Shown: positions 17,398 through 55,100, counted from the stretch's first letter. The stretch is DNA of 64,000 bases from Macrostomum lignano (GCA_002269645.1 NIVC01000097.1:1712-65711); one strand, 5' to 3'. Notes: a model not told the origin generated them from the letters alone. Numbers and translations: made by a program.

Positions 17398-17966
17398 ATG
17401 CACTCGAACACTTATCCAAGATGCTGGAAGGTTCTGTCTGCCATCGCTCTCCTAATACTGGTGCATCAGATTGAGCTCAGCTGCTCGACAAGCCCCTGCA
17501 TTACTCAGCTCGACTTGGTGGTCGCAGTGGACACATCGTCTTCATGCTCTCAAAAGCAGTTCGACAGGCTGCTCTCAGAGGTGAAGGCCTTGGTCTCTAA
17601 ATTTCCAATCGGTCCGACAAAAACTCGACTGGCTCTGATCGGCATGTCGCAGACTGCGCAGGTTCTCGCCAACTTCGACGACGTGACGTCTCTGTCGGAC
17701 TTTAACTCTGCGGTCGACAGGCTGACGATGAGTTCCGAACGAGCCGAAATCTCGAAGGGCATCAAGCTGGCTCGGGAGTCCGTGCTCAACAAGGCCAGGG
17801 CTGCTCCGACTCCAAGACTCTTAGCTCTGGTAAAGGACAGGCAGTGCGCTGAGAGAATAACGGGATCGAGCGACGCGGAACTGGCTTCGATTGAGTCGGA
17901 AGTCGCAGCCGCGCGGTCGATGGAAAGCGCAGTGCACGCAGTCGGAATCGGCGGGTTGTGGAACAG
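17398..17966 (+). CDS. vWA secreted protein paralog 2, exon 1: signal peptide + vWA domain 1
   Basis: ATG; hydrophobic VLSAIALLILV; DLVVAVDTSSS (DxSxS); donor AG|GTGAGA at 17967 (phase 2). Confidence 0.88.
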
Positions 17967-18274
17967 GTGAGACTGAGACGAATTTTTTTCGCGACTTTGC
18001 TTGAAAATCGTGTTTTAATGAGATTAGCTACACTTGCTCGTAGTATTTTTATAGTTTTCATACAGGTCACAATCTAACTGTAGCAGCCGTTGAATATGGT
18101 ACCCAATACGTCATTTTCCAACCTGGAATGGGTGACAATTATGTTGGTTTGCAAGCGCAAGCTTGAATATCATCGTAAAAAAACATGAGGCGATGCTTTG
18201 AGATTCTTTATTAGAAGTCGCAAATGCCACGCGTTCAACACTGCTTAGCGTTTGACCTCGACTTGTATTTTCAG

Positions 18275-18528
18275 TAAGGAGCTGAAGGCCGTCTTTGGAA
18301 CCAACTTCCTGCTTTTCAAGAACACGAACAAGGCTATGGAGTCCATCAAGTCTTTAAATTATAAAATGTGTCTTCCAACAACCTGCAAACACTCGGGACG
18401 GACAAATAAGAGAGAAGCCTGCATTGGATGGGGGCTTCAAGAATTTACGTTCAATGTTGCTGCCGCTCTCACTTCGTCTGGCATGGGAGTCTGCAGACAG
18501 CAGATCGAGAGGTCATTAGTGGAGTGTG
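18275..18528 (+). CDS. vWA paralog 2, exon 2 (end of vWA1 + 4-Cys module)
   Basis: tttcag| acceptor, phase 2 joins in frame to KELKAVFGTNFLL; donor G|GTGAGT. Same length (254 nt) as the paralog 3 exon. Confidence 0.85.
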
Positions 18529-19851
18529 GTGAGTTGGGAAAACTAAAATCTCGATTATTAGAATGCGCATTTTTGTTGGGCAAAAGTGAGATCGACATAG
18601 TCAAAATTCAGCGTGTGACTAAAGAAGTGAGTTGGATTTAGTCCCGTATCGATGTGCCATAGACAATGGATTTGATTTATAGTCAGTTTGAAAGTTGAGA
18701 AATAATGGAAATAGGAAAGTTTAGCCAACGTTGCTTGGATTTAGTCAGAGGAAAATGAAGCTACAGATGCGTAGAATGTAGAATATGTATATGTAGAACA
18801 CAATAATGAAAAACAAGCATATAAAAAACAAGCAGAATGGATATGCAACGAGAGCTGCGGGCTCCATTGCAAATTCAGCGAACAGCTTGCGAGTCATGCC
18901 TCCTCGCACAAAAGGCATGTGCATAAGACCACGTGTTGGGCTTGCAGCCAAACAAATCGACCACGTTGTCTTGTACCTGTACAGAGCGCGTTCCTTCAGG
19001 CGCACGGCCTTGTATTCCAGCTGGCCATTTGTTGCAGCCCATTTTGTCGCAGAACACCAGGAGCTTACCGAATCCTTCCATCAATAGCCTTTCAGCGAGC
19101 TGCCACTGATCCAGTTTAATACGGTTTTTGTTCCATGAATTTGGAATTTTAAGTAGAAGCTTCAACATTATGAGATGTCCATCCAAAGCTCGGCTAATGG
19201 TCTGTATTTCATTGAGAAATTGCCGCATGTCATCAGGTACATCAGCGATAAATTGTATGAGGGCATCGGTTTTGTCGTCGCGCTTTAAAGCCTGAATTTA
19301 AAACTCTTCATAGTTCACGATGACGTTCCTGGCCGATCGACGTAGTATATTCAATTGCCTTGCGAGCTGGAGCTAGTCTACGTTGCTAACAAACGAATTC
19401 ACAGCCTTTCACAAGTCTTCAAAATGGCAAATCATCTCTGCCCGTTCGCAACTGCCATGAACTTTATTAATTTCACTTTGGATTAGATCTAACCAAGGAG
19501 TTCTATAATTAGCAATCTGGAGTGGAAACAAGTTTTTCATTTTACCTCAGGAGGCCAGACTAGCACAGGCAGAGTCAGACAGAGTCATGGACATTCACTG
19601 CTAGATCCTTATCTTAACAATATGCGTGGCCTCGTGAGGTAAAACTCGTTTTCATTAGATTGCTAATTAGATGTCTTCTTGATCTAACTTACAAAGCGAG
19701 CAGACAAAGTCTGCGGACTAAATATATTTCAATAGTGGACCGCAGTAGTCTATATTCAATCAATTTAGGACTAAATCCCACCCCCTACCTTCTCTCGGTC
19801 AACGCTGCACTTCGACTGTCTATCTTCTTTTGCCCTGCTAAAATTTATAAG

Positions 19852-19968
19852 GTCCAACTGAATCAAAGGGCGAGAAGACCTGCTACAAAATGGAGCGAAG
19901 CATCGGCTCATGCCAAGATGACGGCAATTTGAACATCATGGAGACACTGCAGTTCTTCGAGTCAGTCA
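19852..19968 (+). CDS. vWA paralog 2, exon 3 (4-Cys module), 3' end replaced by (GTCA)n; end coordinate is the first in-phase GTCAGT donor
   Basis: Acceptor tttataag|. Translation GPTESKGEKTCYKMERSIGSCQDDGNLNIMETLQFF aligns to paralog 3 exon 34024-33878. Homology stops where the array starts at 19961. Confidence 0.6.
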
Positions 19969-21116
19969 GTCAGTCAGTCAGTCAGTCAGTCAGTCAGTCA
20001 GTCAGTCAGTCAGTCAGTCAGTCAGTCAGTCAGTCAGTCAGTCAGTCAGTCAGTCAGTCAGTCAGTCAGTCAGTCAGTCAGTCAGTCAGTCAGTCAGTCA
20101 GTCAGTCAGTCAGTCAGTCAGTCAGTCAGTCAGTCAGTCAGTCAGTCAGTCAGTCAGTCAGTCAGTCAGTCAGTCAGTCAGTCAGTCAGTCAGTCAGTCA
20201 GTCAGTCAGTCAGTCAGTCAGTCAGTCAGTCAGTCAGTCAGTCAGTCAGTCAGTCAGTCAGTCAGTCAGTCAGTCAGTCAGTCAGTCAGTCAGTCAGTCA
20301 GTCAGTCAGTCAGTCAGTCAGTCAGTCAGTCAGTCAGTCAGTCAGTCAGTCAGTCAGTCAGTCAGTCAGTCAGTCAGTCAGTCAGTCAGTCAGTCAGTCA
20401 GTCAGTCAGTCAGTCAGTCAGTCAGTCAGTCAGTCAGTCAGTCAGTCAGTCAGTCAGTCAGTCAGTCAGTCAGTCAGTCAGTCAGTCAGTCAGTCAGTCA
20501 GTCAGTCAGTCAGTCAGTCAGTCAGTCAGTCAGTCAGTCAGTCAGTCAGTCAGTCAGTCAGTCAGTCAGTCAGTCAGTCAGTCAGTCAGTCAGTCAGTCA
20601 GTCAGTCAGTCAGTCAGTCAGTCAGTCAGTCAGTCAGTCAGTCAGTCAGTCAGTCAGTCAGTCAGTCAGTCAGTCAGTCAGTCAGTCAGTCAGTCAGTCA
20701 GTCAGTCAGTCAGTCAGTCAGCCACTCACTCACTCAAGTCAGTCAGTCAGTCAGTCAGTCAGTCAGTCAGTCAGTCAGTCAGTCAGTCAGTCAGTCAGTC
20801 AGTCAGTCAGTCAGTCAGTCAGTCAGTCAGTCAGTCAGTCAGTCAGTCAGTCAGTCAGTCAGTCAGTCAGTCACTCAAGTCAGTCAGTCAGTCAGTCAGT
20901 CAGTCAGTCAGTCAGTCAGTCAGTCAGTCAGTCAGTCAGTCAGTCAGTCAGTCAGTCAGTCAGTCAGTCAGTCAGTCAGTCAGTCAGTCAGTCAGTCAGT
21001 CAGTCAGTCAGTCAGTCAGTCAGTCAGTCAGTCAGCCACTCACTCACTCAAGTCAGTCAGTCAGTCAGTCAGTCAGTCAGTCAGTCAGTCAGTCAGTCAG
21101 TCAGTCAGTCAGCCAG
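19961..21116 (+). repeat. Giant (GTCA)n microsatellite, ~1.15 kb
   Basis: Near-perfect array with ccactcactcactcaa interruptions. Confidence 0.98.
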
Positions 21117-21136
21117 CAAGCATGTCTATTTTTCAG

Positions 21137-21617
21137 CCGAAGCAAGAGTCTGCAGAGACCAAGTCGCAGATGTGATAATACTGCTGGATAAATCCGGTTC
21201 ACTTGAGAAGGAATACTCCATGCTTTCGGAGTCTGCGAATATATTAATTAATCCGCTTCAGATAGGAAAGAAAAGCATTCAACTCGGAGTTTATTCTTTC
21301 AATGAAGATTTTTTTACAATAGTGGAATTTGGGGATGAGTTTAATAAAAAGAAAATTCAGGAAAAAGTTAAACGCGAGAAAAAGAAATCTGGACATTCGG
21401 GCACGCATACCCACCAGGCGATTGACAAAATCAGAAATATTCTGCAATCGAAAGGCCGACCAAACGTCTTAAAAGCTGTTATTATCATCACGGATGGAGG
21501 GAGCGGGGATGAAACCGCGACGTGGAAGGCAGCGACGAATATCAAAAAGGTCGGCGTCACGCTGTATGCGGTAGGAGTCGAGGGAAAACGTGACATCGGC
21601 ACGCGTGCCATAAATAA
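21137..21617 (+). CDS. vWA paralog 2, exon 4: vWA domain 2 (MIDAS DKSGS...T...TDG)
   Basis: ttttcag| phase 1 gives EARVCRDQVADVIILLDKSGS; KAVIIITDG; GVTLYAVGV; donor AA|GTAAGT. Confidence 0.88.
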
Positions 21618-22100
21618 GTAAGTCTTTTTACACTGATTTCAAACTACTGCTCCATGTTTTGCTGAGCAGGGAGTTTACAGCAGTGGTAGTTTGGCCAATG
21701 CAAACATTGGCACCAAGAGCTGCCGGTTTTAGGTGATGTTTAGGGAAATTTATAAAAATCAATTCTGCAATATTCAGTTTAGGATACCTCTGATGATATG
21801 CTCAAAATGTTTTGATATTTTTTTGGTTCATCATTGTTTCATACAAGATGGTTTACAGTTATTTTACCGAAGGAAACAATTGAAAGCTGTATTAATGCTG
21901 GCAGGCTCTTTAAATGGGTTTATATTTTGCTTGCATCAAAACAGCGCGCCTCTTAAAAGTTAAGGCAGTACAGTTACTCGTCATATGGGTGGAAAGCGTC
22001 TTTGGTAGTGTTTCTTGAGTTTAGTCATGCACTGGATTTAAGATTCAAAAGTACATACTGTGCTTATATCTCGTGGTAACAACACATCTTGCAACAACAG

Positions 22101-22378
22101 GGACGAGCTGGAGATGATGACGGCGCCAGAGTCAGATAAAAACGTTTTCATTTTGGATGATATTAAGAAGATGAAGCATTGGGCTAAAAACTTCTCAGAG
22201 CGGCTCTGCATGGAGTTGGAACCGCCGAGCCCAAAGTTGTGCGACGCTGATGTTGAGATCAAGTCCCTCAAATCGAACTGTAGGGTTGAAAAAATTCAAA
22301 CCGCTACGGTAAACTTCAAGTACGACACAGCTAAAAAGTGCATCAAGCATTTTAGAGCCGAGATACTTGAAGGTTGCA
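22101..22378 (+). CDS. vWA paralog 2, exon 5 (end of vWA2 + 4-Cys module)
   Basis: caacag| phase 2 gives DELEMMTAPESDKNVF...; donor A|GTAAGT. Homologous to 30980-30706. Confidence 0.85.
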
Positions 22379-22576
22379 GTAAGTTGCTCAGGAATTGCTT
22401 AAGTTTGCTCAAGAGTTTTTTTCATCTTCGCATGAAAATTCCGAAGAACGAGTCTCGCTTAGAAGACATAGCAGCCTCAAATAACAGTGGTCATAAACTG
22501 CTAGAAAATAATTCTTAAACATTGAGTGCACCATGCTCAGCCATTTAAACACTTGAACGCCAAACCAAACTTGTAG

Positions 22577-22726
22577 AGACCATCTGCGTCGACCCGATTG
22601 ACGGCAGCGACCACCTGGAAGGCGAGACTTGGACGAACATGTGCCACGAGTTTCGCTGCCTTTCCCGCAAAACAATCCTGCCAACAACACAAAAACAACA
22701 GAGTACGCTGCCAACCACTGTTAAGA
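22577..22726 (+). CDS. vWA paralog 2, exon 6 (vWC-like start + Thr/Gln-rich linker)
   Basis: ttgtag| phase 1 gives KTICVDPIDGSDHLEGETWTNMCHEFRC; donor A|GTAAGT. Confidence 0.8.
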
Positions 22727-22747
22727 GTAAGTCTGGGACCGCTTTTC

Positions 22748-23030
22748 TTCAGTCACTGCATGTGTGCATGTCTGCCAGCCCTCCCTCAGTCACTGCATGT
22801 GTGCCAGCCCTCCCTCAGTCACTGCATGTGTGCCAGCCCTCCCTCAGTCACTGCATGTCTGCCAGCCCTCCCTCAGTCACTGCATGTCTGCCAGCCCTCC
22901 CTCAGTCACTGCATGTGTGCCAGCCCTCCCTCAGTCACTGCATGTCTGCCAGCCCTCCCTCAGTCACTGCATGTCTGTCAGGCCTCCCTCAGTCACTGCA
23001 TGTCTGCCAGCCCTCCCTCAGTCACTGCAC
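22748..23030 (+). repeat. 29-bp intronic minisatellite (cagtcactgcatgtctgccagccctccct)
   Basis: About 10 units. The same unit occurs at 29820-30205 in inverted orientation. Confidence 0.95.
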
Positions 23031-23065
23031 CCGGCCAGCTCCGCAACAATCCAGTTGCTAGGCAG

Positions 23066-23229
23066 TCCACCACTCGCCCATTCCAGAATGCGTGGCTGCC
23101 GACTTCAGCTGCAAGCCGATTGGCGCGGCGCCGTTTCGCTGCAGAAACATCGACGGCGAGGAGAGAGAAAACTGCCAGTGCATCGACAAGGACGGCGAGG
23201 CCGTGCTGGTGGTCGACAACCCCAACTGA
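23066..23229 (+). CDS. vWA paralog 2, terminal exon 7 (Cys-rich C-terminus)
   Basis: ggcag| phase 1 gives HHSPIPECVAADFSCKPIGAAPFRCRNIDGEERENCQCIDKDGEAVLVVDNPN*. The acceptor was chosen by phase and has a weak pyrimidine tract. Confidence 0.7.
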
Positions 23230-23696
23230 CAGGCCGGGATCACGGCTCTTCAGCCAAGCTTTGTAGGAGAGCTTTGACTTAAAGAACGGATTTAGGCGAC
23301 CAAATTTGGCGGTGCTGATTTCTTCAGTGTATTTATTAGCGATTTCTTTGATTTTGTAGCTGAACTTCTTTTAGGATGAGCGATGCAGAAAATCAGCTCT
23401 TCATGATTTGGCGAGTTAAGAGAACCTTTACTTTAATTGATTACTTTGATCGATAATTAGTCTGCAAAACTACTCGTAGTAGGTCTCAAAGCTTATGCTG
23501 CAATCAGTTTAGTGTATTGAACTTTATTTTAAGTGTCCCGAAAATATATATGCCTTTAAGTAGCTTAAATACAATGCATGCATCTAGGCAGCTATAAACA
23601 CCAAAAAAACAATTTTTATGTTTTACGAGTACTAAATTTTATGCTCTGATTTCTGTGATGGAATTGAGGAGCTCAAATTCCATTGGATGCGCTGGT

Positions 23697-24107
23697 GCAT
23701 GGGGGCATGAGGGGCATGAAGGGCATGAGGGGCATGCGGGGCATGAGGGGCATGAGGGGTATGAGGGGCATGGGGGGCATGAGGGGCATGAGGGGCATGA
23801 GGGGCATGAGGGGCATGAGGGGCATGAGGGGCATGAGGGGCATGAGGGGCATGAGGGGCATGAGAGGCATGAGGGGCATGAGGGGCATGAGGGGCATGAG
23901 GGGCATGAGGGGCATGAGGGGCATGGGGGCATGAGGGGCATGAGGGGCATGAGGGGCATGAGGGGCATGAGGGGCATGAGGGGCATGAGGGGCATGAGGG
24001 GCATGAGGGGCATGAGGGGCATGAGGGGCATGCGGGGCATGAGGGGCATGAGGGGCATGAGGGGCATGAGGGGCAGGAGGGGCATGAGGGGCATGAGGGG
24101 CATGGGG
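23697..24107 (+). repeat. 9-bp minisatellite (ggggcatga)n
   Basis: About 45 units with a few variants. Confidence 0.97.
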
Positions 24108-24684
24108 TAATCAAGGACTACTTAACAGCACAGGACGTTACACTAGCAAATTTTCGCAGAATTCCAGAAGGCAGCTTTGAATGTATGTTTCTATGGTCTT
24201 AGTGGCCTTTTTGCTTGTGAAGCAATGTGTATAATACATTAATAGAAATTGATGAAGTCTAGTGAATAAATCCTTTCATATGCATGCATTCCGACATTAG
24301 TCATTTGTAATTTCTCCAAAAGATGAACTAGGTGAACATATTAAACAAAGAACGAAGAAATACCAGAAATAAAGGGATTCCTAGATGCGTTTCTAAATTG
24401 TAGAATAGAAGCAACAAAGAATTAGCTAAGATAGCAACATCGAATCGAAACTTATAATCGAGATCGCCAGATGACTAACCACTTGCCTTTCTAAGTGCCT
24501 CCTACCCTATCTCTTCTGTTTCCGCCCTATTCTTCCTGTACTTTCTCTATCTCCTCTCTTTTTTTTGTCTCCCTCTGCACTCTTTTCCTGCGCTGTCCCC
24601 TCTTTCCCTGTGTCTACTTACAGTATTTTGTGTGCTCACCGTCCCCCCATCCCCTCTCAAACTCCCAAACGGTGACGCAAGTCG

Positions 24685-26491
24685 TGTGACCCCCTCTCCC
24701 CCTCAGTGACTCATCGATGACTCATCCCCCTCTCTTGCGCAACCTTTTCTCACGCCATTGTTCTCCTCCCCAAATTTCTCATGCGACACCCACCCCACCT
24801 CCGCTTCTATTGTTCTCGTTTTTGCTTCTTTTGTTCTCTCGACCCCACCAATTATCACATTTTCTCCGATTTTCTCTTTCTTTTGTTCTCGTTTTCGCAC
24901 CTAATTATCACCTTTCCTCCAATGTTTACTTTTCCATTGTTCTCAGTTTCCCCCAATTATCCCCGATTTCCAATTCCTTTGTTCTCGACCCCAGCCCTAT
25001 TGTTCTCAATGTTTGCTTGCGCAACACTTTCGCGACCACCCGCTGCGCCAATTATCCCCCACCCCACCTCCGGATTGCGCAATTTCCCTATTTCTCATGT
25101 TGCTATGCCGGTCTCATGCTTCTCATCATGACTCATTCTGACGTCATTCTGCCGGCAGCCAATCAGAGAGAGGGAGCCATGGTAACGACCTTGAGGAGGC
25201 GGCTGTGAGGTCTATAAAAGGAAGCGATTTCGGCATGAGAATCCTCAATCCCTCTTCCTCTCCTCGTCCTTCTTTGGACTTGCAGTCAGATTGAGTTCTG
25301 ACCCATTCGTCTATAAGACGAATCCCTGCCGGTCCGCGGTCTGTTACCGCCAAGTTATCCTTAGCTCCCCAAGTGAGCTCGCCTATCGGCCAGCGGTCTG
25401 ATACCGCCCAGCATCATCAGCATCGCCTGATCTACATCAGCGCCTCGTCGCTCCAGCGCATCGCCGCTTCACTGTCTGCCTGACTGCAGCCCACAGCCAC
25501 CCTCGGTCACTCCGCCTCTCTCTCTCTCTGTGCAGCTACCGGTAAGTTCCTGTTACTAATTTGTGCTCTAATTGCCTTTGCTTATCCGGGGTTTGCCTAT
25601 TTTCCATTGTCTGATTAGAGAGCTGAGCCAATTGTGATACCGTATCTTTTGCTGTATTTTACTCAATAGTGAAGCCGCCTAATTGCCTGCTTATTCGCCT
25701 AAGGGCCTAATTACTAACTATTAACTAACTTCATCATTATTCAATCTTTCACCATCATTTAACTCATGGCTTGCTAAGCTTTTCTCCCGGGGTGGCAAAG
25801 CATAAGGAAGTTTGGGTAAGCTAATGGCCTCTCCCCGTGCAAAGCCCGCCTGTGTGAGTGCGTGCGGCGGGTTCGTGAGTGCGTGCAGTGGAGGGTAATT
25901 AGCGAGTCTTGGCACAGAATGGCAGTAGGAAGGTTGCAACCCCATGCTAACGCGTCCCTTCGCCCTGAGCAATCTAAACTAGAGACAGTACATGTTCGCC
26001 TCATACTACTCTTAGTAATCAAAGTCGCAAGTCAGCCTCGCTCACAGCCACAAAGGATCCCCTGCTGAGAAATCCTCCAGGATTGAGCCCAGAGTTCCCG
26101 ATCATGCCCCAAGCAGAGTCCCTGTACTCGGCTGCATGCGTCTCCCCTGTTAGCCTAAATCCCCTGGTAACCAATCCAGGCGGGGCTCTAGCCTCGAGAG
26201 GTCTGGTAGAAAGATCCAGGTGCGCCAGGTCACATAGAGTGGTGGCAGCCACTCGGTCATACCATGACCGAGTGACCAACTATTGCACCTTGGCTACAGG
26301 TGGGGTCCATGTGGGTCCTTGGCCCTCTGGTCACGAAGCGCTACCAAAAGCTACTAATCATGTGGGCGGGACAGTCTGGTGCTGGAGGTCCGTCAGGTCA
26401 TTGCCCGGTCATAGGCAGCCTACGGTCATTGCCCCCTCTCGCCAAGCGTTCGTCTCTCAATAGGAGCGGACAGGCGACAAGGGCGGTTACA
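24685..26491 (+). mobile_element. Probable solo LTR (~1.8 kb)
   Basis: Termini TGTGACCCC...GGCGGTTACA. Contains TGACTCA three times, TGACGTCA at 25139, CCAAT at 25159, TATAAAAG at 25213 and a GTAAGT donor near 25541. No TSD or PBS found. Confidence 0.5.
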
Positions 26492-27029: not shown

Positions 27030-27230
27030 CTTCATTCTAGCATCCTCCGGCCAATGCTTGCGGCATACGCGCCCATGTACGCACTAAAATATTACCTTAC
27101 CTTTGCTGCGATACGCAAAAAGCCTTCATTCAGGAGTCAGCCTCATTCTCTTCTTTCAGAAAAGTAATACACGATGCACATTGTAGTGCTGATGCAGCCT
27201 GAAGTCTGCAACACTTCGTCGGAATCTTGT
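27030..27230 (-). mobile_element. Possible degenerate THAP zinc-finger relic (transposase N-terminus)
   Basis: Pieces across frameshifts: PTKCC / SGCISTT..VYYF / KEENEADS*MKAF / RVCRKHWPED, resembling the THAP pattern CCVxGC..FP..W..CxxHF. Confidence 0.3.
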
Positions 27231-28199
27231 ATAACTCAATTGAATTGGAAGCAAGAAATAAAATCTTCCGAGAACGCAGAGAAGTTAGCTGTTTGCTCTT
27301 GTCTACTTTGGTACTCTAAGCTAGACTTGTTGGCTATCATGCTGCGCTAGTATTTATGCGAAATGACATTGAAAAGCAAAAAGGCCACCAAAACCACTAA
27401 ATACATTATTAAAAGCGGCCTTTTAGAATTCTGCCAATATTTGCAAGTGTAACGTCCTGTATTGTTAAGTAGTCCATTGGGGTGATGAGGGGCATGAGGT
27501 GTATGAGAGGCATAAGTAAATGAGGGGCATGAGGAGCCCCTCGAGCTGTAACTTGTTGTATGCACTGTCTATACAGTCTGTTGTATTTGATTTTCACAAT
27601 TTCAAAGAATAAATGGTATATATTTCCCGTTTATACCAGTGCTAGGGCAATAAATGCTTGAGTGACTTGTTTATTGACCGAGGCGAAGCTGTTTATTGAC
27701 CGTTTATTTGCATCGAAAGAGCAGTTGCACAGTAAAATAAACCGTTTATTTGCACCGATGCAAATAAATGAAATTTACACTGAGACCACAGACGTTCGCC
27801 CGGGCAGTGCCAGTGGGGAAAACATGGTCAGTTGTCAGTTTATGTTCAGTGGATCAGTTTATCCGTTTATGTAATTAGGTTAGGTTGGAATACTATATGT
27901 TTCAATCAAAAGTAACTCTTCAGAAATGAATGAGCTAGGAGGTGAGGAGGCGGGGAGAAGAGGAGAAGAAGAGAATGCTAAGAGACGAGCTACTTGAATT
28001 GCTTGGTTTCAACATTGGTTTACATAGCATTTAGAATGGGGAATAATTTAGATGGTACTGGTACGTGACTACTTTTCATTGGCTGAGACTGGGTCGAGTC
28101 CTAAGCTTTTTCTTGTTGGAACGCATTGATTGGTTCCATTCAAATTGAAACTTTCAGAGCTAAATTGTATCACATCAGTTAAGTTTAGGTTTAAGAACG

Positions 28200-28530: not shown

Positions 28531-29619
28531 TCAGTTTCAATGTGTGGAATCAAAATGAATCTGTGGAATCAATCAACCAGAAGATGCCACATACGAAAAG
28601 ACTAGGGAAAAGGTCTACAATGGTCAAGTGTCCAATGTACCACCTGATCAAGGTACCCTTCCAAGGTAGACTGCAGGGGGTCTCTAATCTTCATTGTACC
28701 TTTCTACCTCTTACGTAAGTTTCAAGATCAAGATAAAGAAACGTGCCTTCAATGCCGCCGTGGTTTTATTCGCTCCTGAATGGTTGCACGCTTGATGACC
28801 AGTTCATTTAAATTTGCAGAGGGAGAAATTATCGACTGCTTGACACTCGGTTTACCCTTTCTTGCTGGCTTTATATAGCTCGTTATACAGAGCCCAGAGC
28901 GTTTTAGCTTTCTCGAATTTCATGCTTGCTAAGCTTTGGTTCGGAGCCAGCTACCGACTGCTTGATTCTCAGCAGGTCTACGTTTGACTCTTGAGCCAGC
29001 GTCACCCAATCCACACAACGCCGGGCCTGATCTACGAGTTACGTCAAAGGCTGCCTTGAAAGGCTGCTTCAGGCTGCGCTCGCAATAAATAATATCTTTA
29101 TTAAAGTTTCAATATGAAATTTGCTTCGAATTATTCCGTCACAGTGGGTTAGGCCAATGTTTTCCATTCAATCAGGTTTATTCTCAAGCATAGTGAAGTT
29201 GATTTGCAGTCGCATCAGGCGCATTAGATCAATGCTTTGTTAGTAGCAGATATGTACGATTGCTTATGCGTGCAGACGCATGGATTGAATTTAAATAAAG
29301 AGCATTAAAAATTGGCGCATGCTGTAAAGAAAAAGTTTTATCCAGGTGTGATGAGACGCATTAGAGGCATTTTTCTTACGACAATAATCGTCCGGAATAG
29401 AAAATCAGGTAAATAAAAACTGTTGCTGGTAATCAGCCAGCACTGAAGGCTAATTAATGAATTATAGTACCGATAGTAAATTACATTTACATATGAATAG
29501 CTGCCCCAAATTTAATTATGACTACTATAAATAGACTAGTTGTTCCTTCACACAGTAATCTACCGATTTATCCAGCTTGATTCGAGGGCCGCGATACCGA
29601 TCAGCTGACTGTCTGCCTG

Positions 29620-29782
29620 TCAGTTGGGGTTGTCGACCACCAGCATGGCCTCGCCGTCCTTGTCGATGCACTGGCAGTTTTCTCTCTCTCGCCGTCGATG
29701 TTTCTGCAGCGAAACGGCGCCGCGCCAATCGGCTTGCAGCTGAAGTCGGCAGCAACGCATTCTGGAATGGGCGAGTGGTGGA
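29620..29782 (-). CDS. vWA paralog 3, terminal exon 7 (1-bp deletion in the GA run near 29690)
   Basis: Nearly identical to 23066-23229; ggcgagagagagaaaac vs ggcgaggagagagaaaac. Confidence 0.7.
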
Positions 29783-29819
29783 CTGCCTAGCAACTGGATT
29801 GTTGCGGAGCTGGCCGGGT

Positions 29820-30205
29820 GCAGTGACTGAGGGAGGGCTGGCAGACATGCAGTGACTGAGAGAGGCCTGACAGACATGCAGTGACTGAGGGAGGGCTGGC
29901 AGACATGCAGTGACTGAGGGAGGGCTGGCAGACATGCAGTGACTGAGGGAGGGCTGGCAGACATGCAATGACTGAAGGAGGGCTGGCAGACATGTAGTGA
30001 CTGAGGGAGGGCTGGCAGACATGCAGTGACTGAGGGAGGGCTGGCAGACATGCAGTGACTGAGAGAGGGCTGGCAGACATGCAGTGACTGAGGGAGGGCT
30101 GGCAGACATGCAGTGACTGAGGGAGGGCTGGCAGACATGCAGTGACTGAGGGAGGGCTGGCAGACATGCAATGACTGAAGGAGGGCTGGCAGACATGTAG
30201 TGACT
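29820..30205 (-). repeat. 29-bp intronic minisatellite, paralogous to 22748-23030
   Basis: About 13 units of the same motif. Confidence 0.95.
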
Positions 30206-30229
30206 AATGTGCTTAGCTCTAACACTTAC

Positions 30230-30352
30230 TTTTAGCAGTGGTTGGCAGGATTGTATTGCCGCTCCGATCGCAGCGGAACTCGTGGCACATGTTGGTCCAA
30301 AACTCGCCTTCCAGGTGGTCGCTGCCGTCAATCGGGTCGACGCAAGTGGCCT
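30230..30352 (-). CDS. vWA paralog 3, exon 6 (vWC-like start)
   Basis: ttacag| gives KATCVDPIDGSDHLEGEFWTNMCHEFRCDRSGNTILPTTAK; donor A|GTAAGT. Confidence 0.8.
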
Positions 30353-30705
30353 CTGTAAGTGAAATTTTTACAGTCTTCTAATAATACGTTTTCTAATAAT
30401 ATATTTAGCTACACGGCTTTTATACGCGTATAGAACTTATGCTTTTAAGAATGTAATCAGAAGTAAGCATGCCTTCTTCCGGTAAAGTATCTAAAAGAAA
30501 AAGTAACCTTCAAAGATCTCATTAAAGTTGTGGAGCTATATTTTCTGTCTAATAGGGTCTGTTTTTTTCTGTTTGTTATTCTTTCAAAAGAATCAATTAA
30601 ATAAATTTCACACAGAAAGTAAAAATAATAGAGAAAGTACCAGCAAATAGCAAAATTCGTAAAATCTTTTAAAATAAAATACCACGTTGTGTGAAGAAAC
30701 CTTAC

Positions 30706-30980
30706 TGCATTTTTTCAATATTCTGTTTTTGAAGTGCTTGATGCACTTTCGCGTCTCGTCGTATTTGAAACTGATGAAAGTGACTTGCATTTTGGATTTG
30801 AAACACGACGAGACGGACTTGAACTGAACATCAGCACTGCACAGCTCTGGGCTTAGTGGCTTTAACTCCATGCAGAGCTGAAGCGAGAATTTTTTCGCCC
30901 AATCCTTCAGCTGATCAAATTTTTCCAAGAGGAAAAGATTCTTATCAGATTCCGGAGCCGTCATCATCTTCAGCTCCTCC
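30706..30980 (-). CDS. vWA paralog 3, exon 5
   Basis: ccaacag| gives EELKMMTAPESDKNLF...KCIKHFKNRILKKC; donor A|GTAAGG. Confidence 0.85.
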
Positions 30981-31122
30981 CTGTTGGAAAAGTAAAACAT
31001 CAGGCGAAGCAAATGTGATAAGTTACTCAAGTATTTTACAACACGGCTATGTCGGTAGTCATTAATTACTTGTATGTAAAATTATCCACCAAGTTTTTCA
31101 AAGCCAATTTTCTTCAACTCAC

Positions 31123-31630
31123 AGATTTAGTATGGCCCCTTCGCTTAGAGGCTTGACTCCGATGGCATAGATAGTAACTCCGCGACTCTTCAAAACCGAT
31201 ACGGCATTAAACAAAACCTTCGGATCATCGCTTGAGCCATCCGTGATGACAATTATGGCTTTGTTAACGTTTCGTCGGCCTTTTGATTCAAGAATTGCAC
31301 CGACTTTTACTAGCGCGTCACCAGTGTACGTGTGACCGAAGTCAGTGGTGTTCGCCATCTCGTCTACGATTTTTAGAATTGCCTGCTTATTAAACTCTTC
31401 GCCAATCGCTACCTTGACTTTGAGCGACTCAGAATAGAACACGCCCGGTGCAAATTGCAAGCCGTTGAAATATGTAACACCTAAATGAACATTTTTAGGC
31501 CCGATATTCATCGATTTGATCAGCTCTCTTGCCGAATTCGTAATTGTGCGGTACTTCGACCTCACTGTTGAAGACTGGTCCAGCATTATCATTACATCAC
31601 CGACTTGGTTTTCGCACTCTATCGCTCGGG
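31123..31630 (-). CDS. vWA paralog 3, exon 4: vWA domain 2 (DQSST variant)
   Basis: tattttag| gives RAIECENQVGDVMIMLDQSST; KAIIVITDG; GVTIYAIGV; donor CT|GTGAGT (phase 2). Confidence 0.88.
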
Positions 31631-31649
31631 CTAAAATAGATATGTCTGC

Positions 31650-31659
31650 AGACTGACTG

Positions 31660-31718
<59 letters not shown>

Positions 31719-31907
31719 GACTGACTGACTGACTGACTGACTGACTGACTGACTGACTGACTGACTGACTTGAGTGAGTGAGTGGCTGACTGACTGACTG
31801 ACTGACTGACTGACTGACTGACTGACTGACTGACTGACTGACTGACTGACTGACTGACTGACTGACTGACTGACTGACTGACTGACTGACTGACTGACTG
31901 ACTGACT

Positions 31908-31958
<51 letters not shown>

Positions 31959-32134
31959 TGACTGACTGACTGACTGACTGACTTGAGTGACTGACTGACT
32001 GACTGACTGACTGACTTGAGTGACTGACTGACTGACTGACTGACTGACTGACTGACTGACTGACTGACTGACTGACTGACTTGAGTGACTGACTGACTGA
32101 CTGACTGACTGACTGACTGACTGACTGACTGACT

Positions 32135-32185
<51 letters not shown>

Positions 32186-32663
32186 TGACTGACTTGAGTG
32201 AGTGAGTGGCTGACTGACTGACTGACTGACTGACTGACTGACTGACTGACTGACTGACTGACTGACTGACTGACTGACTGACTGACTGACTTGAGTGAGT
32301 GAGTGGCTGACTGACTGACTGACTGACTGACTGACTGACTGACTGACTGACTGACTGACTGACTGACTGACTGACTGACTGACTGACTGACTGACTGACT
32401 GACTGACTGACTGACTGACTGACTGACTGACTGACTGACTGACTGACTGACTGACTGACTGACTGACTGACTGACTGACTGACTGACTGACTGACTGACT
32501 TGAGTGACTGACTGACTGACTGACTGACTGACTTGAGTGACTGACTGACTGACTGACTGACTGACTGACTGACTGACTGACTGACTGACTGACTGACTTG
32601 AGTGACTGACTGACTGACTGACTGACTGACTGACTGACTGACTGACTGACTGACTGACTGACT

Positions 32664-32714
<51 letters not shown>

Positions 32715-33114
32715 TGACTGACTTGAGTGAGTGAGTGGCTGACTGACTGACTGACTGACTGACTGACTGACTGACTGACTGACTGACTGACTGACTGACT
32801 GACTTGAGTGAGTGAGTGGCTGACTGACTGACTGACTGACTGACTGACTGACTGACTGACTGACTGACTGACTGACTGACTGACTGACTGACTGACTGAC
32901 TGACTGACTGACTGACTGACTGACTGACTGACTGACTGACTGACTGACTGACTGACTGACTGACTAACTGACTGACTGACTGACTGACTGACTGACTGAC
33001 TGACTGACTGACTGACTGACTGACTGACTGACTGACTGACTGACTGACTGACTGACTGACTGACTGACTGACTGACTGACTGACTGACTGACTGACTGAC
33101 TGACTGACTGACTG

Positions 33115-33165
<51 letters not shown>

Positions 33166-33850
33166 GACTGACTGACTGACTGACTGACTGACTGACTGAC
33201 TGACTGACTGACTGACTTGAGTGAGTGAGTGACTGACTGACTGACTGACTGACTGACTGACTGACTGACTGACTGACTGACTGACTGACTGACTGACTGA
33301 CTGACTGACTGACTGACTGACTGACTGACTGACTGACTGACTGACTGACTGACTGACTGACTGACTGACTGACTGACTGACTGACTGACTGACTGACTGA
33401 CTGACTGACTGACTGACTGACTGACTGACTGACTGACTGACTGACTGACTGACTGACTGACTGACTGACTGACTGACTGACTGACTGACTGACTGACTGA
33501 CTGACTGACTGACTGACTGACTGACTGACTGACTGACTGACTGACTGACTGACTGACTGACTGACTGACTGACTGACTGACTGACTGACTGACTGACTGA
33601 CTGACTGACTGACTGACTGACTGACTGACTGTGACTGACTGACTGACTGACTGACTGACTGACTGACTGACTGACTGACTGACTGACTGACTGACTGACT
33701 GACTGACTGACTGACTGACTGACTGACTGACTGACTGACTGACTGACTGACTGACTGACTGACTGACTGACTGACTGACTGACTGACTGACTGACTGACT
33801 GACTGACTGACTGACTGACTGACTGACTGACTGACTGACTGACTAACTGA
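31650..33850 (-). repeat. Giant (GTCA)n microsatellite (GACT on + strand), ~2.2 kb, with (GTAA)n blocks
   Basis: Fills almost the whole 2247-bp intron and has the same ccactcactcactcaa interruptions as 19961-21116. Confidence 0.98.
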
Positions 33851-33877
33851 CATAAATAAGATGAACAAGAAACTTAC

Positions 33878-34024
33878 AGCAGTCGACTTTATGCTTTTCT
33901 GTATGTGTCACGCACGATTGTTTTTTTCTGTCGAAGAACTGCAGCGTCTCTGAGATGAGCAAATTGCCGTCAGCTTTGCATGCGCCAAGACTTCGCTCCA
34001 TCTTGCTGCAGGACTTCTTCTCTT
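33878..34024 (-). CDS. vWA paralog 3, exon 3 (complete 4-Cys module, 147 nt, phase 1-1); not in the ORF track
   Basis: ttgcag| gives EKKSCSKMERSLGACKADGNLLISETLQFFDRKKQSCVTHTEKHKVDC; donor T|GTAAGT. Confidence 0.82.
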
Positions 34025-34079
34025 CTGCAAGTATTTTGTGAAGCTTTTAAAATTTTTAAAACTCTCTATTCGGCAAAGA

Positions 34080-34440
34080 AGACGAAGAAGAAGAAGCATG
34101 GAGGCAAAGAAAGCTGGTGAGATACCAGAGTGGCAGTTGGTTCACTCTGGAATGGATGCTGTGAATGAATCCGAGTTTCCAGGAACATCAGGGGTTTGCC
34201 CAGATTGGACGCCTCCAGCTTCAGCTGATGGAAACGAAGAAGACTTTCTGAATTCGGAATTACTGATGGAATCATTGTCAGCGGGAAGACCTGGACGAAT
34301 CGTAGAGCATTGAGGATATTTGAGGAGTGCGCCGACAAGGAGCAGTTGCCGAATGTGGTGAAGAACTGGAGTGTTTGCACAGATGATGAGGTGAGGATGC
34401 CGTTCGGGATTGTTCTTTGGATGAGCCTGGACAAAAAACA
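34080..34440 (+). mobile_element. piggyBac-like (PGBD) transposase N-terminal relic inside an intron
   Basis: Acidic region, EFPGTSGVCPDW, then KNWSVCTDDEVRMPFGIVLWMSLDKK, matching the piggyBac motif W..T..E.R.F.G..L.M.L.KK. Confidence 0.55.
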
Positions 34441-34678
34441 GATCAGCAGCTGTCTTTAATCCCGATGAATAATATACATTATATTACATATTATATTCTT
34501 ATAATATATAATATATAATATATTATAATATTCCAAGATTATTTTGAATGTTTTTAATTTGTAGGTCCATTAATAACAACAAATTAAATTAGTTTTTTCA
34601 ACTTAATGGTCAAAGCACACAAATGGACACTTATGCCATAGTTGAATTTTTCCAAATACAAATGCAGTAGAAACTCAC

Positions 34679-34932
34679 TGCAGGACTGAAATGACCTCGC
34701 GATCTGCTGTCTGCAGACTCCCACGCCTGACGCGGTGAAAGCGCCAGCAACATTCACCGTCAGTACGTGCTGCGATTTTTTAAAGCAAGTTTCAGGCTTC
34801 ACCGTCCGCCCCGAGTTTTTGCAGGTTGATGGCGGGCATAATTTTTTGTTTAGAGACTTGACGGACTCCATAGCCTTGTTCGTGTTCTTGAAGAGCAGGT
34901 AGTTTGTTCCGAAAATGGCCTTCAGCTCCTTG
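34679..34932 (-). CDS. vWA paralog 3, exon 2
   Basis: ttttag| gives SKELKAIFGTNYLL...CRQQIARSFQSC; donor A|GTGAGT; 254 nt. Confidence 0.85.
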
Positions 34933-35319
34933 CTAAAATTATTAGAAATTAGAGATAGCAATCTTAGATAGCTGCATACTTTTATCAACGGAAATAGCAA
35001 TCAGCGAAACGAATACTTTGCCTCCTGAAAATTAAACTTGATCAGCCAGCAATCACTGTATAAGTTGCTTTTTTAACACAAGCTTCGGTAAATTCAGCTC
35101 TTGATTGTGCTATTCCGGTCCACACCGGACATTTATTATGATTGGAATCTCGAAAGAAGTCAGAAAGAACTCTTTCTTTTGAGCACACAGAGAATTTTCG
35201 CTGTATATCATTGGGATTTTTTAATTACTAAGGTACTTGCCAATTTAATCCTCATAAAATATTTAGCTATTCTCTTCTCAAATGCAGTTTTGAAGCTGGT
35301 GCAAATTTATTTGTCTCAC

Positions 35320-35887
35320 CTGTTCCACAACCCGCCGATTCCAACTGCGTGCACTGCGCTTTCCATCGACCGCGCGGCTGCGACTTCCGACTCAATCGAA
35401 GCCAGTTCCGCGTCGCTCGATCCCGTTATTCTCTCAGCGCACTGCCCGTCCTTTACTAGAGCTAAGAGTCTTGGAGTCGGAGCAGCCCTGGCCTTGTTGA
35501 GCACGGACTCCCGAGCCAGCTTGATGCCCTTCGAGATTTCGGCTCGTTCGGAACTCATCGTCAGCCTGTCGACCGCGGAGTTGAAGTCCGACAGAGACGT
35601 CACGTCGTCGAAGTTGGCGAGAACCTGCGCAGTCTGCGAATGCCGATCAGAGCCAGTCGAGTTTTTGTGGGACCGATTGGAAATTTAGAGACCAAGGCCT
35701 TCACCTCTGAGAGCAGCCTGTCGAACTGTGTTTGAGAGCATGAAGACGATGTGTCCACTGCGACCACCAAGTCGAGCTGAGTAATGCAGGGGCTTGTCGA
35801 GCAGCTGAGCTCAATCTGATGCATGAGAAGCAAGGCAGTGCTGACGGACAGAGCTTTCAAAAAGCATTTGCCACAGTTTGTGAGCAT
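35320..35887 (-). CDS. vWA paralog 3, exon 1 (signal peptide + vWA1), 1-bp deletion near 35640
   Basis: ATG at 35887; mature part nearly identical to paralog 2; gcgaatgccg vs gcgacatgccg; length 568 vs 569 nt; donor AG|GTGAGA. Confidence 0.82.

Positions 35888-50217: not shown

Positions 50218-50913
<696 letters not shown>

Positions 50914-53101: not shown

Positions 53102-55100
<1,999 letters not shown>

What the first reader, a model, noticed from the sequence alone, without database searches (positions are those of the whole stretch)
17398..35887. Mosaic paralogs: homogenised vWA1 and C-terminus flank a hypervariable vWA2 (constant-variable-constant design)
Seen: between paralogs 2 and 3 the mature part of exon 1 differs by about 2 aa in about 165, and is near-identical even at synonymous sites. 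Identity starts abruptly after the divergent signal peptide (at HQIELS) and ends 7 nt into intron 1. A second near-identical tract covers the 29-bp intron minisatellite and exon 7, ending a few nt after the stop. In between, vWA2 is only about 35% identical by my manual alignment, with an ~11-aa indel, and exons 2, 3 and 5 are intermediate. Relic 4 shows a third vWA2 C-terminal variant. Inference: segmental gene conversion, favoured by the inverted arrangement, keeps a scaffold constant while a ligand-binding vWA diversifies. This is the pattern seen in recognition systems (allorecognition, immune, gamete/seminal or adhesive specificity). This is my best candidate for an undescribed system in the window.
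Basis: partly seen in the sequence, partly recalled or inferred. Interest (0 to 1): 0.82.

Follow-up and report, generated by a model that had tools for sequence, protein, structure and literature searches.

The report
Flatworm vWA gene cluster, homogenised ends
Neighbouring copies of a secreted two-vWA-domain gene in the flatworm Macrostomum lignano are old duplicates whose first and last exons are kept almost identical by copy-and-paste recombination (gene conversion); this is a clean but ordinary case of partial concerted evolution, with no evidence so far for a recognition system.

Summary
The sequence pattern is real. The window is Macrostomum lignano contig NIVC01000097.1. Paralog 2 (17398-23229, +) and paralog 3 (35887-29620, -) are 7-exon genes for secreted two-vWA proteins.

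- **Tracts:** they are 98.2% identical over 512 nt (from HQIELS to 7 nt into intron 1). They are 97.7% identical over 470 nt (intron-6 29-bp minisatellite plus exon 7, to 5 nt past the stop).
- **Divergence:** synonymous divergence is 0.04-0.06 in these tracts and 1.2 in the vWA2 exon (40% aa identity). Introns 1, 2, 4 and 5 cannot be aligned.
- **Replication:** the same mosaic holds for paralog types 1 and 4 and on two sister contigs, so it is not assembly collapse.
- **Mechanism:** interlocus gene conversion is well supported.
- **"Hypervariable" reading:** not supported. vWA2 dN/dS is 0.36-0.70, its dS is saturated, and vWA2 is 99.6-100% identical between subgenome copies of the same type. 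Direct-orientation pairs are homogenised as much as inverted ones.
all three copies in this window carry lesions. Paralog 3 has two 1-nt deletions. Paralog 2 has a 79-nt deletion removing the end of exon 3. Paralog 1 exon 1 has two indels. The sister-contig copies are intact.

Function and expression are unknown. This is a new example of a known kind.

The parts
17398..23229 (+). Paralog 2 (type T2, = Mlig014655). Exons: e1 17398-17966, e2 18275-18528, e3 19852-19960 (truncated), e4 21137-21617 (vWA2 core), e5 22101-22378, e6 22577-22726, e7 23087-23229.
   Evidence: The exons are 100% identical to those of the exact spliced model of P0001 on sister contig NIVC01001851.1. Splice sites are GT..AG. 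Pfam hits are VWA x2.
29620..35887 (-). Paralog 3 (type T3, = Mlig003734g2). Exons: e1 35887-35320, e2 34932-34679, e3 34024-33878, e4 31630-31123, e5 30980-30706, e6 30352-30230, e7 29761-29620.
   Evidence: The exons are 99.3-100% identical to the spliced model of P0006, and P0008 is the annotated truncated product of this copy.
76..641 (-). Exon 1 of paralog 1 (type T1, Mlig004332-like). The rest of the gene lies beyond the window start. It carries two 1-nt indels, near 588 and near 131.
   Evidence: It is 98.2-98.8% identical to T1a/T1b exon 1, with 2 gaps. The tblastn hits change frame at these points, and the indels show in the alignment.
17462..17973 (+). 5' homogenised tract, T2 arm: mature part of exon 1 plus 7 nt of intron 1.
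   Evidence: 98.2% identity over 512 nt to 35823-35313; dS 0.058.
35313..35823 (-). 5' homogenised tract, T3 arm. Contains the 1-nt deletion at 35640|35639.
22765..23234 (+). 3' homogenised tract, T2 arm: 29-bp minisatellite 22765-23029, 57 nt of unique intron, exon 7, and 5 nt after the stop.
   Evidence: 97.7% identity over 470 nt to 30083-29615; TRF result.
29615..30205 (-). 3' homogenised tract, T3 arm: minisatellite 29819-30205 and exon 7. Contains the 1-nt deletion at 29689|29688.
17194..17970 (+). T1-T2 shared 5' tract: 204 nt upstream of the ATG, the signal peptide and exon 1. It pairs with 844-72 on the minus strand.
   Evidence: 93.8% identity over 778 nt. The same extent, up204 to i1:4, is seen on the sister contig.
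19960..21116 (+). (GTCA)n microsatellite in intron 3 of T2. It abuts the truncated exon 3 directly, where 79 nt are deleted relative to the sister contig.
31651..33851 (-). (GTCA)n microsatellite in intron 3 of T3.
36947..37081 (+). "Relic 4": an isolated fragment resembling the last ~25 residues of the vWA2 exon (..IQKDGVTLYAIGV..).
   Evidence: hmmsearch with the family profile against the six-frame ORFs gives E = 6e-4 at profile positions 466-490. It is the only hit outside the three genes. tblastn E = 0.02.

Best explanation
The locus is a cluster of four paralog types (T1-T4) known so far from Macrostomum lignano, with only distant relatives elsewhere. Three of the types are in this window.

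**The protein.**
- Each gene has 7 exons and encodes a secreted protein of about 670 aa.
- The domain order is: signal peptide, vWA1 (exon 1), a Cys-rich linker (exons 2-3), vWA2 (exons 4-5), and a Cys-rich C-terminal module (exons 6-7).
- vWA2 has a DxSxS..T..D MIDAS pattern.

**The history.**
- The paralogs are old. dS in the central exons is about 0.3-1.4.
- Recurrent non-allelic gene conversion has homogenised two islands, bringing dS there down to 0.04-0.09.
- One island is the mature part of exon 1. The other runs from the intron-6 minisatellite through exon 7.
- Tract borders sit where homology stops: unalignable introns, the divergent T3 signal peptide, and the T2 3' flank. This is expected if heteroduplex extension needs homology.
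- The middle of the gene has drifted beyond the identity needed for conversion. It evolves under purifying to relaxed selection.

**Status of each step.**
- Shown: the mosaic, its significance, its replication on sister contigs, and the domain content.
- Inferred: the conversion mechanism, with the minisatellite as a possible initiation site.
- Inferred from domain homology only: the proteins act as extracellular matrix or adhesive adaptors of the collagen-VI / matrilin / PTMP1 type. In this reading vWA2 gives each paralog its own ligand preference, and vWA1 and the C-terminus provide common functions.
For: **Identity of the locus.** Homologues at high identity are found only in M. lignano. 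The window encodes P0008 and corresponds to NIVC01000097.1.

**Gene models.** Exact 7-exon spliced models were recovered. They derive from an RNA-seq-guided annotation (PMC5730564).

**Tracts.**

**dS by exon.** Exon 1 0.04-0.09 and exon 7 0-0.07, against exon 4 0.30-1.46 across six pairs. Fisher p = 1e-20 and permutation p <= 1e-4.

**Non-coding DNA.** Non-coding sequence lies inside the tracts, while the other introns align at only 44-51%.

**Shared polymorphisms.** Exon 1 sites 219, 286 and 306 carry alleles shared between types. The copy T1c on contig 75 has a T3-like exon 7 and 3' flank.

**Outgroup comparison.** Exons 1 and 7 are 30-39% identical to outgroup homologues, against 22-26% for exon 4. 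Long-term constraint therefore cannot give 96-98% identity.

**GC3 gradient.** It parallels the degree of homogenisation and fits GC-biased conversion.

**Domains.** Pfam VWA x2. The PDB profile search is led by collagen VI alpha-3 (E = 3.7e-25) and the two-vWA mussel byssus protein PTMP1 (E = 6.9e-22).

**Selection.** dN/dS is below 1 everywhere.
Against: **Tree evidence is weak.** Quartet trees are strongly resolved only for exon 1 and exon 4, and those two agree: (T1,T4 | T2,T3). Tree incongruence is therefore not the main support.

**Alternative origin not excluded.** A few discrete chimera-forming exchanges, rather than recurrent conversion, could give much of the same picture.

**Function untested.**
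- No expression data were found.
- The AF2 model is poor (mean pLDDT 46). Only vWA2 is confident.
- The C-terminal module has no PDB sequence match.

**Possible inflation of identity.** The assembly was Pilon-polished with multi-mapping reads in a triplicated genome (PMC5730564, PMC10733133). Identity inside the tracts could be slightly inflated, and some 1-nt indels could be errors.
Confidence: 0.78

Rival explanations
1. Recognition-type system. Conversion is maintained by selection to hold a constant scaffold, while vWA2 is driven apart by diversifying selection for ligand specificity (allorecognition, immune, gamete or seminal, or adhesive).
For: - vWA2 is the fastest-evolving part both within the family and against outgroups.
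- dN/dS in exon 4 (0.70 for T1-T4) is higher than in exons 2, 3 and 5 (0.21-0.40).
- A few 30-codon windows exceed 1, after the DxSxS loop and around alpha5-beta6.
- A 13-aa indel sits in the beta2-beta3 loop. In integrin beta I-like domains this position holds the specificity-determining loop (my own knowledge).
- Copy number differs between subgenome contigs: T4 is present on contig 75 only.
Against: - No exon-wide dN/dS exceeds 1, and the windows above 1 rest on 1.5-3 synonymous changes.
- dS in vWA2 is saturated, so age alone explains the divergence.
- vWA2 is 99.6-100% identical between subgenome copies of one type.
- Only four types were found.
- Variation is spread over surface helices and loops rather than focused.
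- No expression or binding data were found.
Confidence: 0.1
2. A small number of discrete exchanges (unequal crossing-over or a segmental replacement) made chimeric genes recently. There is no ongoing conversion.
For: - Breakpoints are sharp, and some are shared by several pairs: e1:65, i1:4-7, stop+5.
- T1c has a whole T3-like 3' end including the flank.
- The tract dS of 0.04-0.09 is close to the dS between subgenome copies (0.03-0.08 for T1a-T1b exons 1-2).
Against: - All six pairs among four types are homogenised at both ends, with different tract extents.
- Polymorphisms are shared in patchwork fashion among copies.
- Graded dS in exon 6 (0.08-0.30) and the GC3 gradient suggest repeated events over time.
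Confidence: 0.08
3. Assembly or polishing artefact. Collapse, or cross-polishing of paralogous exons with multi-mapped Illumina or RNA-seq reads, created the near-identity.
For: - The assembly is PacBio/Canu polished with Pilon using genomic and RNA-seq reads.
- 93% of read pairs multi-map in this triplicated genome.
- The exon-1 tract ends at the exon border.
- The window copies carry 1-nt indels, one of them at a site that varies between paralogs.
Against: - The same tracts occur on three contigs with copy-specific SNPs.
- The 3' tract includes an intronic minisatellite and 57 nt of unique intron that RNA reads cannot polish.
- The 5' border lies inside an exon.
- Proteins from the independent ML2 assembly (P0005, P0007, P0009) show the same mosaic.
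- The tracts are about 0.5 kb inside contigs longer than 60 kb with unique flanks.
Confidence: 0.03
4. Extreme purifying selection alone, including on synonymous sites, keeps exons 1 and 7 identical without any exchange.
For: Exons 1 and 7 are slightly better conserved than vWA2 against outgroups: 30-39% versus 22-26%.
Against: - Non-coding sequence within the tracts is equally identical.
- dS is 20-30 times lower than in neighbouring exons.
- Outgroup conservation of exons 1 and 7 is only 30-39%.
- Polymorphisms are shared between paralogs.
Confidence: 0.01

Closest known systems
Partial concerted evolution by interlocus gene conversion in linked paralogs. Examples from established knowledge: human gamma-globin HBG1/HBG2, where the tract is bounded by an intronic simple repeat; RHD/RHCE; SIGLEC11/16, where the 5' exons are converted and the rest is divergent.
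   Same: - Linked paralogs with sharply bounded tracts of near-identity that include non-coding DNA.
- dS is very uneven along the gene.
- A tandem repeat lies at a tract edge.
- GC content is enriched in the converted parts.
   Different: - A new gene family in a flatworm.
- Both gene ends are converted while the middle escapes.
- The genome is triplicated, so exchange among subgenome copies is also possible.
- No functional consequence is known.
Secreted multi-vWA matrix proteins: collagen VI alpha-3 N-domains (9HAN), mussel byssus PTMP1 (4CN8, two vWA domains), matrilins.
   Same: - Collagen-type vWA domains give the best PDB profile hits (E = 3.7e-25 and 6.9e-22).
- There is a signal peptide.
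- Two vWA domains are separated by a Cys-rich linker, which resembles the matrilin layout.
   Different: - No EGF repeats, coiled coil or collagen triple helix were detected.
- The linker and the C-terminal Cys-rich module have no recognised family.
- Identity to these proteins is about 23-25%.
- The proteins here are therefore not members of those families. They only share the vWA domain.
Diversified invertebrate recognition or immune gene families, such as sea-urchin Sp185/333, snail FREPs and Hydractinia Alr.
   Same: Clustered, lineage-restricted, secreted paralogs with a mosaic of conserved and divergent segments and repeats in the introns.
   Different: - No dN/dS above 1 was found.
- There is no variability between copies of the same type.
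- Only four types exist.
- No immune or allorecognition expression or phenotype is known.
Distant M. lignano paralog group Mlig013408/Mlig006715 (P0036), plus unidentified-organism transcripts P0050 and P0118.
   Same: The architecture is the same over the full length: profile positions 32-668 match residues 38-670 of P0036 (E = 1.3e-68).
   Different: - Identity is only 20-50% per region.
- They are not part of this cluster.
- They serve here as outgroups.

Membership tests
von Willebrand factor type A (vWA) domain proteins | Sequence match to the vWA profile, twice per protein. | tested here: met
   Precomputed Pfam hits PF00092/PF13519 appear twice per protein. The PDB profile search hits collagen VI, PTMP1, integrin I domains and VWF A domains. 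The AF2 secondary structure of residues 340-530 alternates beta and alpha elements with pLDDT 75-89.
von Willebrand factor type A (vWA) domain proteins | MIDAS motif DxSxS ... T ... D. | tested here: inconclusive
   - vWA2: DKSGS, T(x)T and ITDG are present in T1, T2 and T4. T3 has DQSST.
- vWA1: DTSSS is present, but the downstream Thr and Asp positions are ambiguous (VKDR replaces TDG).
- Metal binding was not tested.
Interlocus gene conversion / concerted evolution | Region-specific collapse of synonymous divergence between paralogs. | tested here: met
   dS is 0.04-0.09 in exon 1 and 0-0.07 in exon 7, against 0.30-1.46 in exon 4. Fisher p = 1e-20.
Interlocus gene conversion / concerted evolution | Tracts include non-coding DNA and have abrupt borders. 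| tested here: met
   The tracts include intron-6 sequence, 7 nt of intron 1 and 5 nt after the stop. The adjacent introns and flanks cannot be aligned.
Interlocus gene conversion / concerted evolution | Shared polymorphism or mosaic relationships among copies. | tested here: met
   Alleles are shared at exon 1 sites. The T1c 3' end is T3-like. T2 switches partner within exon 1.
Interlocus gene conversion / concerted evolution | Incongruent per-segment phylogenies. | tested here: inconclusive
   With four taxa, only exon 1 and exon 4 are resolved, and they agree. Exons 2, 3, 5 and 6 are unresolved.
Interlocus gene conversion / concerted evolution | Paralogs cluster by species, not by orthology, in the converted segments. 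| not testable with these tools
   No other Macrostomum genomes or transcriptomes are in the searchable collections.
Diversifying recognition system (constant-variable-constant) | Excess non-synonymous change (dN/dS above 1) in the variable domain. | tested here: not met
   Exon 4 dN/dS is 0.36-0.70. Local windows above 1 are not significant.
Diversifying recognition system (constant-variable-constant) | High variability of the variable domain among alleles or copies of one gene. | tested here: not met
   vWA2 exon identity between copies of one type is 99.8% for T1a vs T1b, 99.6% for T3 and 100% for T2. These are subgenome copies of an inbred line, so population diversity remains untested.
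Diversifying recognition system (constant-variable-constant) | Expression or phenotype in a recognition context. | not testable with these tools
   The gene identifiers do not appear in the searchable paper texts or in five checked supplement sets.
Matrilins | vWA - EGF repeats - vWA - C-terminal coiled coil. | tested here: not met
   No EGF or coiled-coil Pfam hit is recorded. The C-terminus is Cys-rich and not helical in the AF2 model.
VWC (chordin-like Cys-rich) domain for exons 6-7 | Sequence or structure match to VWC. | tested here: not met
   The pattern C..P..G....GE.W...C..F.C only recalls VWC by eye. A profile of six C-termini finds no PDB match below E = 1, and no Pfam hit is on record.

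The most novel reading that the evidence does not exclude
The cluster could be a Macrostomum-specific modular ligand-binding system.

- Selection would favour conversion of vWA1 and the C-terminal Cys-rich module because all paralogs must dock to one common partner or co-assemble.
- vWA2, including its beta2-beta3 insertion loop, would be kept apart to bind different targets, for example in reproduction, eggshell, adhesion or defence.
- The inverted exon-1 repeats (17462-17973 and 35313-35823) could additionally allow inversion. That would swap the T2 and T3 gene bodies between two different promoter and signal-peptide units.
Probability: 0.1. Interest if true: 0.6.

Novelty: new member of a known kind. 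Interest (0 to 1): 0.3.

Why it matters
- **For genome evolution:** it is a tidy, statistically strong example of exon-island gene conversion in a neopolyploid flatworm. It shows that exchange between paralogs is about as recent as the divergence of the subgenomes.
- **For annotation:** all three copies on this contig look damaged while the sister-contig copies are intact. That bears on pseudogenisation after genome duplication, or on residual assembly error.
- **For flatworm biology:** it flags an uncharacterised secreted two-vWA family known so far mainly from M. lignano. This species supports RNAi and transgenesis, so the family could be tested there.

It does not open a new kind of mechanism.

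Tried and rejected
**Literature.**
- The gene identifiers (Mlig014655, Mlig004332, Mlig003734) occur in no searchable paper text.
- Supplement look-ups of PMC7336406, PMC5816591, PMC5730564, PMC5946080 and PMC12896417 found nothing. PMC10786194 holds no supplement text.
- "Macrostomum lignano" with "von Willebrand" returns only the adhesive proteins Mlig-ap1/2, which have vWD domains and are unrelated.
- "Macrostomum" with "gene conversion" returns nothing relevant.

**Structure.**
- The AF2 prediction with the 4-sequence family alignment is too poor to map variable residues onto a MIDAS face (mean pLDDT 46). No fold search was run on it.

**C-terminal module.** The VWC idea is not confirmed.

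**Trees.** Per-exon quartet trees are mostly unresolved, so I dropped "incongruent trees" as evidence.

**More relic exons.** A family-profile search of all six-frame ORFs finds only one fragment outside the genes.

**Rejected explanations.** Assembly collapse or RNA-guided polishing is rejected, and so is pure purifying selection. The reasons are given under the rival explanations.

**Homologue sources.** P0050 (run SRR30276812) and P0118 (JGI sample 3300019095) come from short unspliced contigs of unidentified organisms.

Full report
**Source and gene content**

A draft protein spliced by eye from the + strand ORFs at 17.4-23.2 kb finds close relatives only in Macrostomum lignano. They are annotated "hypothetical protein / VWFA domain-containing". 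The next best hit is a mollusc collagen-XII-like protein at 23% identity.

Look-ups of the annotated proteins place the window on NIVC01000097.1 (65,711 nt, assembly Mlig_3_7). The same cluster lies on sister contig NIVC01001851.1, in the order T3, T2, T1, a 141-aa gene, then a TUDOR gene. Parts of it lie on NIVC01000075.1.

The window and contig 1851 are colinear at 98.5-99.6%, with SNPs of about 0.2-0.5% plus indels. This fits the three subgenome copies described for the inbred DV1 line, where the CDS SNP rate is about 1.1% (PMC10733133).

**Gene models**

I recovered exact 7-exon spliced models by forcing the genomic DNA to translate to each annotated protein. I then transferred them to the window by blastn.

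- T2 (+): 17398-17966, 18275-18528, 19852-19960, 21137-21617, 22101-22378, 22577-22726, 23087-23229.
- T3 (-): 35887-35320, 34932-34679, 34024-33878, 31630-31123, 30980-30706, 30352-30230, 29761-29620.
- T1: only exon 1 (641-76, -) is in the window.

All introns are GT..AG. The annotation is RNA-seq guided, so the models have transcript support (PMC5730564).

**The observation**

- The 5' tract is 17462-17973 vs 35823-35313: 98.2% over 512 nt, from HQIELS to 7 nt into intron 1.
- The 3' tract is 22765-23234 vs 30083-29615: 97.7% over 470 nt. It covers the 29-bp minisatellite, 57 nt of unique intron and exon 7, and ends 5 nt after the stop.
- Introns 1, 2, 4 and 5 and both flanks align at only 39-51%. 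The apparent identity of intron 3 reflects the (GTCA)n microsatellite present in both genes.

Nei-Gojobori estimates on the intact sister-contig copies, T2 vs T3:

| Region | dS | dN |
|---|---|---|
| Signal peptide | 1.06 | 0.57 |
| Exon 1, mature part | 0.058 | 0.008 |
| Exon 2 | 0.45 | 0.24 |
| Exon 3 | 0.51 | 0.22 |
| Exon 4 (vWA2) | 1.22 | 0.57 |
| Exon 5 | 0.89 | 0.32 |
| Exon 6 | 0.34 | 0.21 |
| Exon 7 | 0.036 | 0.018 |

Exon 4 has 40% aa identity and a net 11-aa indel. The contrast is far beyond chance (Fisher p = 1e-20; permutation p <= 1e-4).

**The pattern is general**

- T1 and the fourth type T4 (P0166, Mlig002694g1, contig 75) show it as well. Exon-1 dS is 0.04-0.09 and exon-7 dS is 0-0.07 in all six pairs. 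Exon-4 dS is 0.30 for T1-T4 and 0.8-1.5 for the rest.
- Tract extents differ by pair.
  - T1-T2 share 204 nt upstream plus the signal peptide.
  - T3 joins only from codon 22.
  - T1/T4 differ from T2/T3 in the last ~78 nt of exon 1 (12 informative sites).
  - T1-T3 share about 300 nt of 3' flank, whereas T2 diverges 5 nt after the stop.
- Exon 1 and exon 7 alignments of all copies show alleles shared across paralog types yet segregating among subgenome copies of one type.
- A further T1 copy on contig 75 (T1c) has a T3-like exon 7 and 3' flank.

**Conversion or constraint**

Against outgroup homologues, regional aa identity is 0.30 (e1), 0.23 (e2), 0.29 (e3), 0.22-0.26 (e4), about 0.3 (e5), 0.2-0.5 (e6) and 0.34-0.39 (e7). 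The outgroups are the distant M. lignano paralog P0036 and two transcripts from unidentified organisms, P0050 and P0118.

Long-term constraint on exons 1 and 7 is therefore only slightly stronger than on vWA2. It cannot explain 96-98% identity, still less identity at silent and intronic sites.

GC3 rises with homogenisation: e7 0.83-0.85, e6 0.66-0.80, e1 0.68-0.70, e2/e3/e5 0.57-0.67, e4 0.44-0.51. This is as expected under GC-biased gene conversion (established knowledge). My own rank correlation with T2-T3 dS is about -0.86 over 7 regions.

I conclude that non-allelic gene conversion, bounded by the limits of residual homology, is the cause. The minisatellite at the 3' tract edge is a plausible initiation site, but this is an inference.

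**The "variable" part**

- vWA2 dN/dS is 0.36-0.70.
- For the least saturated pair, T1-T4, it is 0.70. That does not differ significantly from 1 (p = 0.14) or from the other exons (p = 0.13). Windows above 1 rest on 1.5-3 synonymous changes.
- Core strands and MIDAS residues are conserved, and changes are spread over helices and loops. There is a 13-aa indel in the predicted beta2-beta3 loop.
- Copies of one type on different contigs are 99.6-100% identical in vWA2, while exons 1 and 2 differ more.
- vWA2 is therefore old and divergent, not demonstrably hypervariable. Because DV1 is inbred, population diversity remains untested.
- Orientation does not matter visibly. Direct pairs (T1-T3, T1-T4) are as homogenised as inverted ones.
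- Quartet trees are resolved only for exons 1 and 4, and these agree, so I do not use tree incongruence as evidence.

**Artefact check**

The assembly is Canu plus Pilon, polished with genomic and RNA-seq reads, in a genome where most reads multi-map. I reject an artefact as the source of the pattern for four reasons:

- The tracts recur on three contigs with copy-specific SNPs.
- They include intronic sequence.
- One border is internal to an exon.
- Proteins from the independent ML2 assembly show the same mosaic.

Polishing may still have caused small errors.

**Lesions in the window copies**

- T3 has 1-nt deletions at 35640|35639 and 29689|29688. GenBank accordingly annotates a truncated 568-aa product, P0008.
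- T2 lacks 79 nt at 19960|19961, namely 53 nt of exon 3 plus the donor, replaced directly by (GTCA)n. A cryptic GT inside the repeat could restore the frame, but 18 residues with two Cys would be lost. This is my reading of the sequence.
- T1 exon 1 has two 1-nt indels.
- The sister-contig copies are intact. Either this subgenome copy of the cluster is decaying after polyploidisation, or these are consensus errors. I cannot tell which.

**What the protein is**

- There is a hydrophobic N-terminus that I read as a signal peptide by eye.
- There are two collagen-type vWA domains. The best PDB hits are collagen VI alpha-3 and the two-vWA mussel byssus protein PTMP1.
- There is a Cys-rich linker and a Cys-rich C-terminus with no recognised family. 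My VWC guess is not confirmed.
- The most likely role is a secreted matrix or adhesive adaptor, inferred from domain homology only.
- No expression or functional data could be found.

**Verdict**

The conversion mechanism is well supported. The recognition-system reading is not supported by any test available here. This is a new example, in an uncharacterised flatworm gene family, of a well-known evolutionary process.

Noticed in passing
window 76-641 (-), 19960|19961, 35640|35639, 29689|29688: All three family genes on this contig carry disruptive lesions: two indels in T1 exon 1, a 79-nt deletion in T2 exon 3, and two 1-nt deletions in T3. The copies on sister contig NIVC01001851.1 are intact. 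This could be decay of one subgenome copy or residual consensus errors.
   Followed up: partly
L006 (NIVC01000075.1 231289-256792) and L005: Contig 75 holds T1b followed by a 143-aa gene and a TUDOR gene on one strand. About 40 kb away it holds a second T1 copy (T1c), then T4, then TUDOR on the other strand. T4 is absent between T1 and TUDOR on contig 1851. This is either copy-number or structural variation between subgenomes, or a chimeric or palindromic assembly.
   Followed up: partly
window 17194-17397 and 642-844: T1 and T2 lie head-to-head 16.7 kb apart and share about 204 nt of upstream sequence plus the signal peptide, at about 94% identity. T3 has an unrelated 5' flank and a divergent signal peptide, which suggests different regulation.
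   Followed up: partly
window 42816-48296 (+): A single 1826-aa open reading frame lies here. The neighbouring annotated gene on this contig is a 2255-aa cadherin (Pfam Cadherin). This is probably a giant exon of a FAT-like cadherin.
   Followed up: no
window 50219-60398: About 10 kb is dense with tandem arrays: (GTCT)n, (ATCT)n x503, a 29/33/66/87-bp satellite (55967-59008) and an 18-bp repeat x45 (59592-60398). GC and AT skew are strong across this stretch.
   Followed up: no
window 23697-24104; 24115-24216 vs 27374-27475: A 9-bp repeat (GCATGAGGG x45) lies just downstream of T2. There is also a 100-nt inverted repeat (84% identity) in the T2-T3 spacer.
   Followed up: no
exons of T1-T4: Within a single gene, GC3 ranges from 0.44-0.51 (exon 4) to 0.83-0.85 (exon 7), and it tracks the degree of homogenisation between paralogs.
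   Followed up: yes
P0036/P0161 (Mlig013408g2, Mlig006715g1; 701-kb contig): A second, distant M. lignano family has the same full-length architecture at about 20-36% identity per region. Short transcripts from unidentified organisms (P0050 from SRR30276812, P0118 from JGI 3300019095) show that the architecture is not limited to this cluster.
   Followed up: partly
P0002 (UniProt A0A1I8GX45, 880 aa): This gene model from the older assembly fuses T2 to the reverse-strand translation of the neighbouring T3 region. It matches 29521-29850 (+) and is an annotation artefact.
   Followed up: no
window 22577-22726 (T2 exon 6): T2 has a 9-aa insertion that duplicates a TILPTT-like Pro/Thr motif in the linker before the last Cys-rich exon. 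This may be an O-glycosylated spacer.
   Followed up: no
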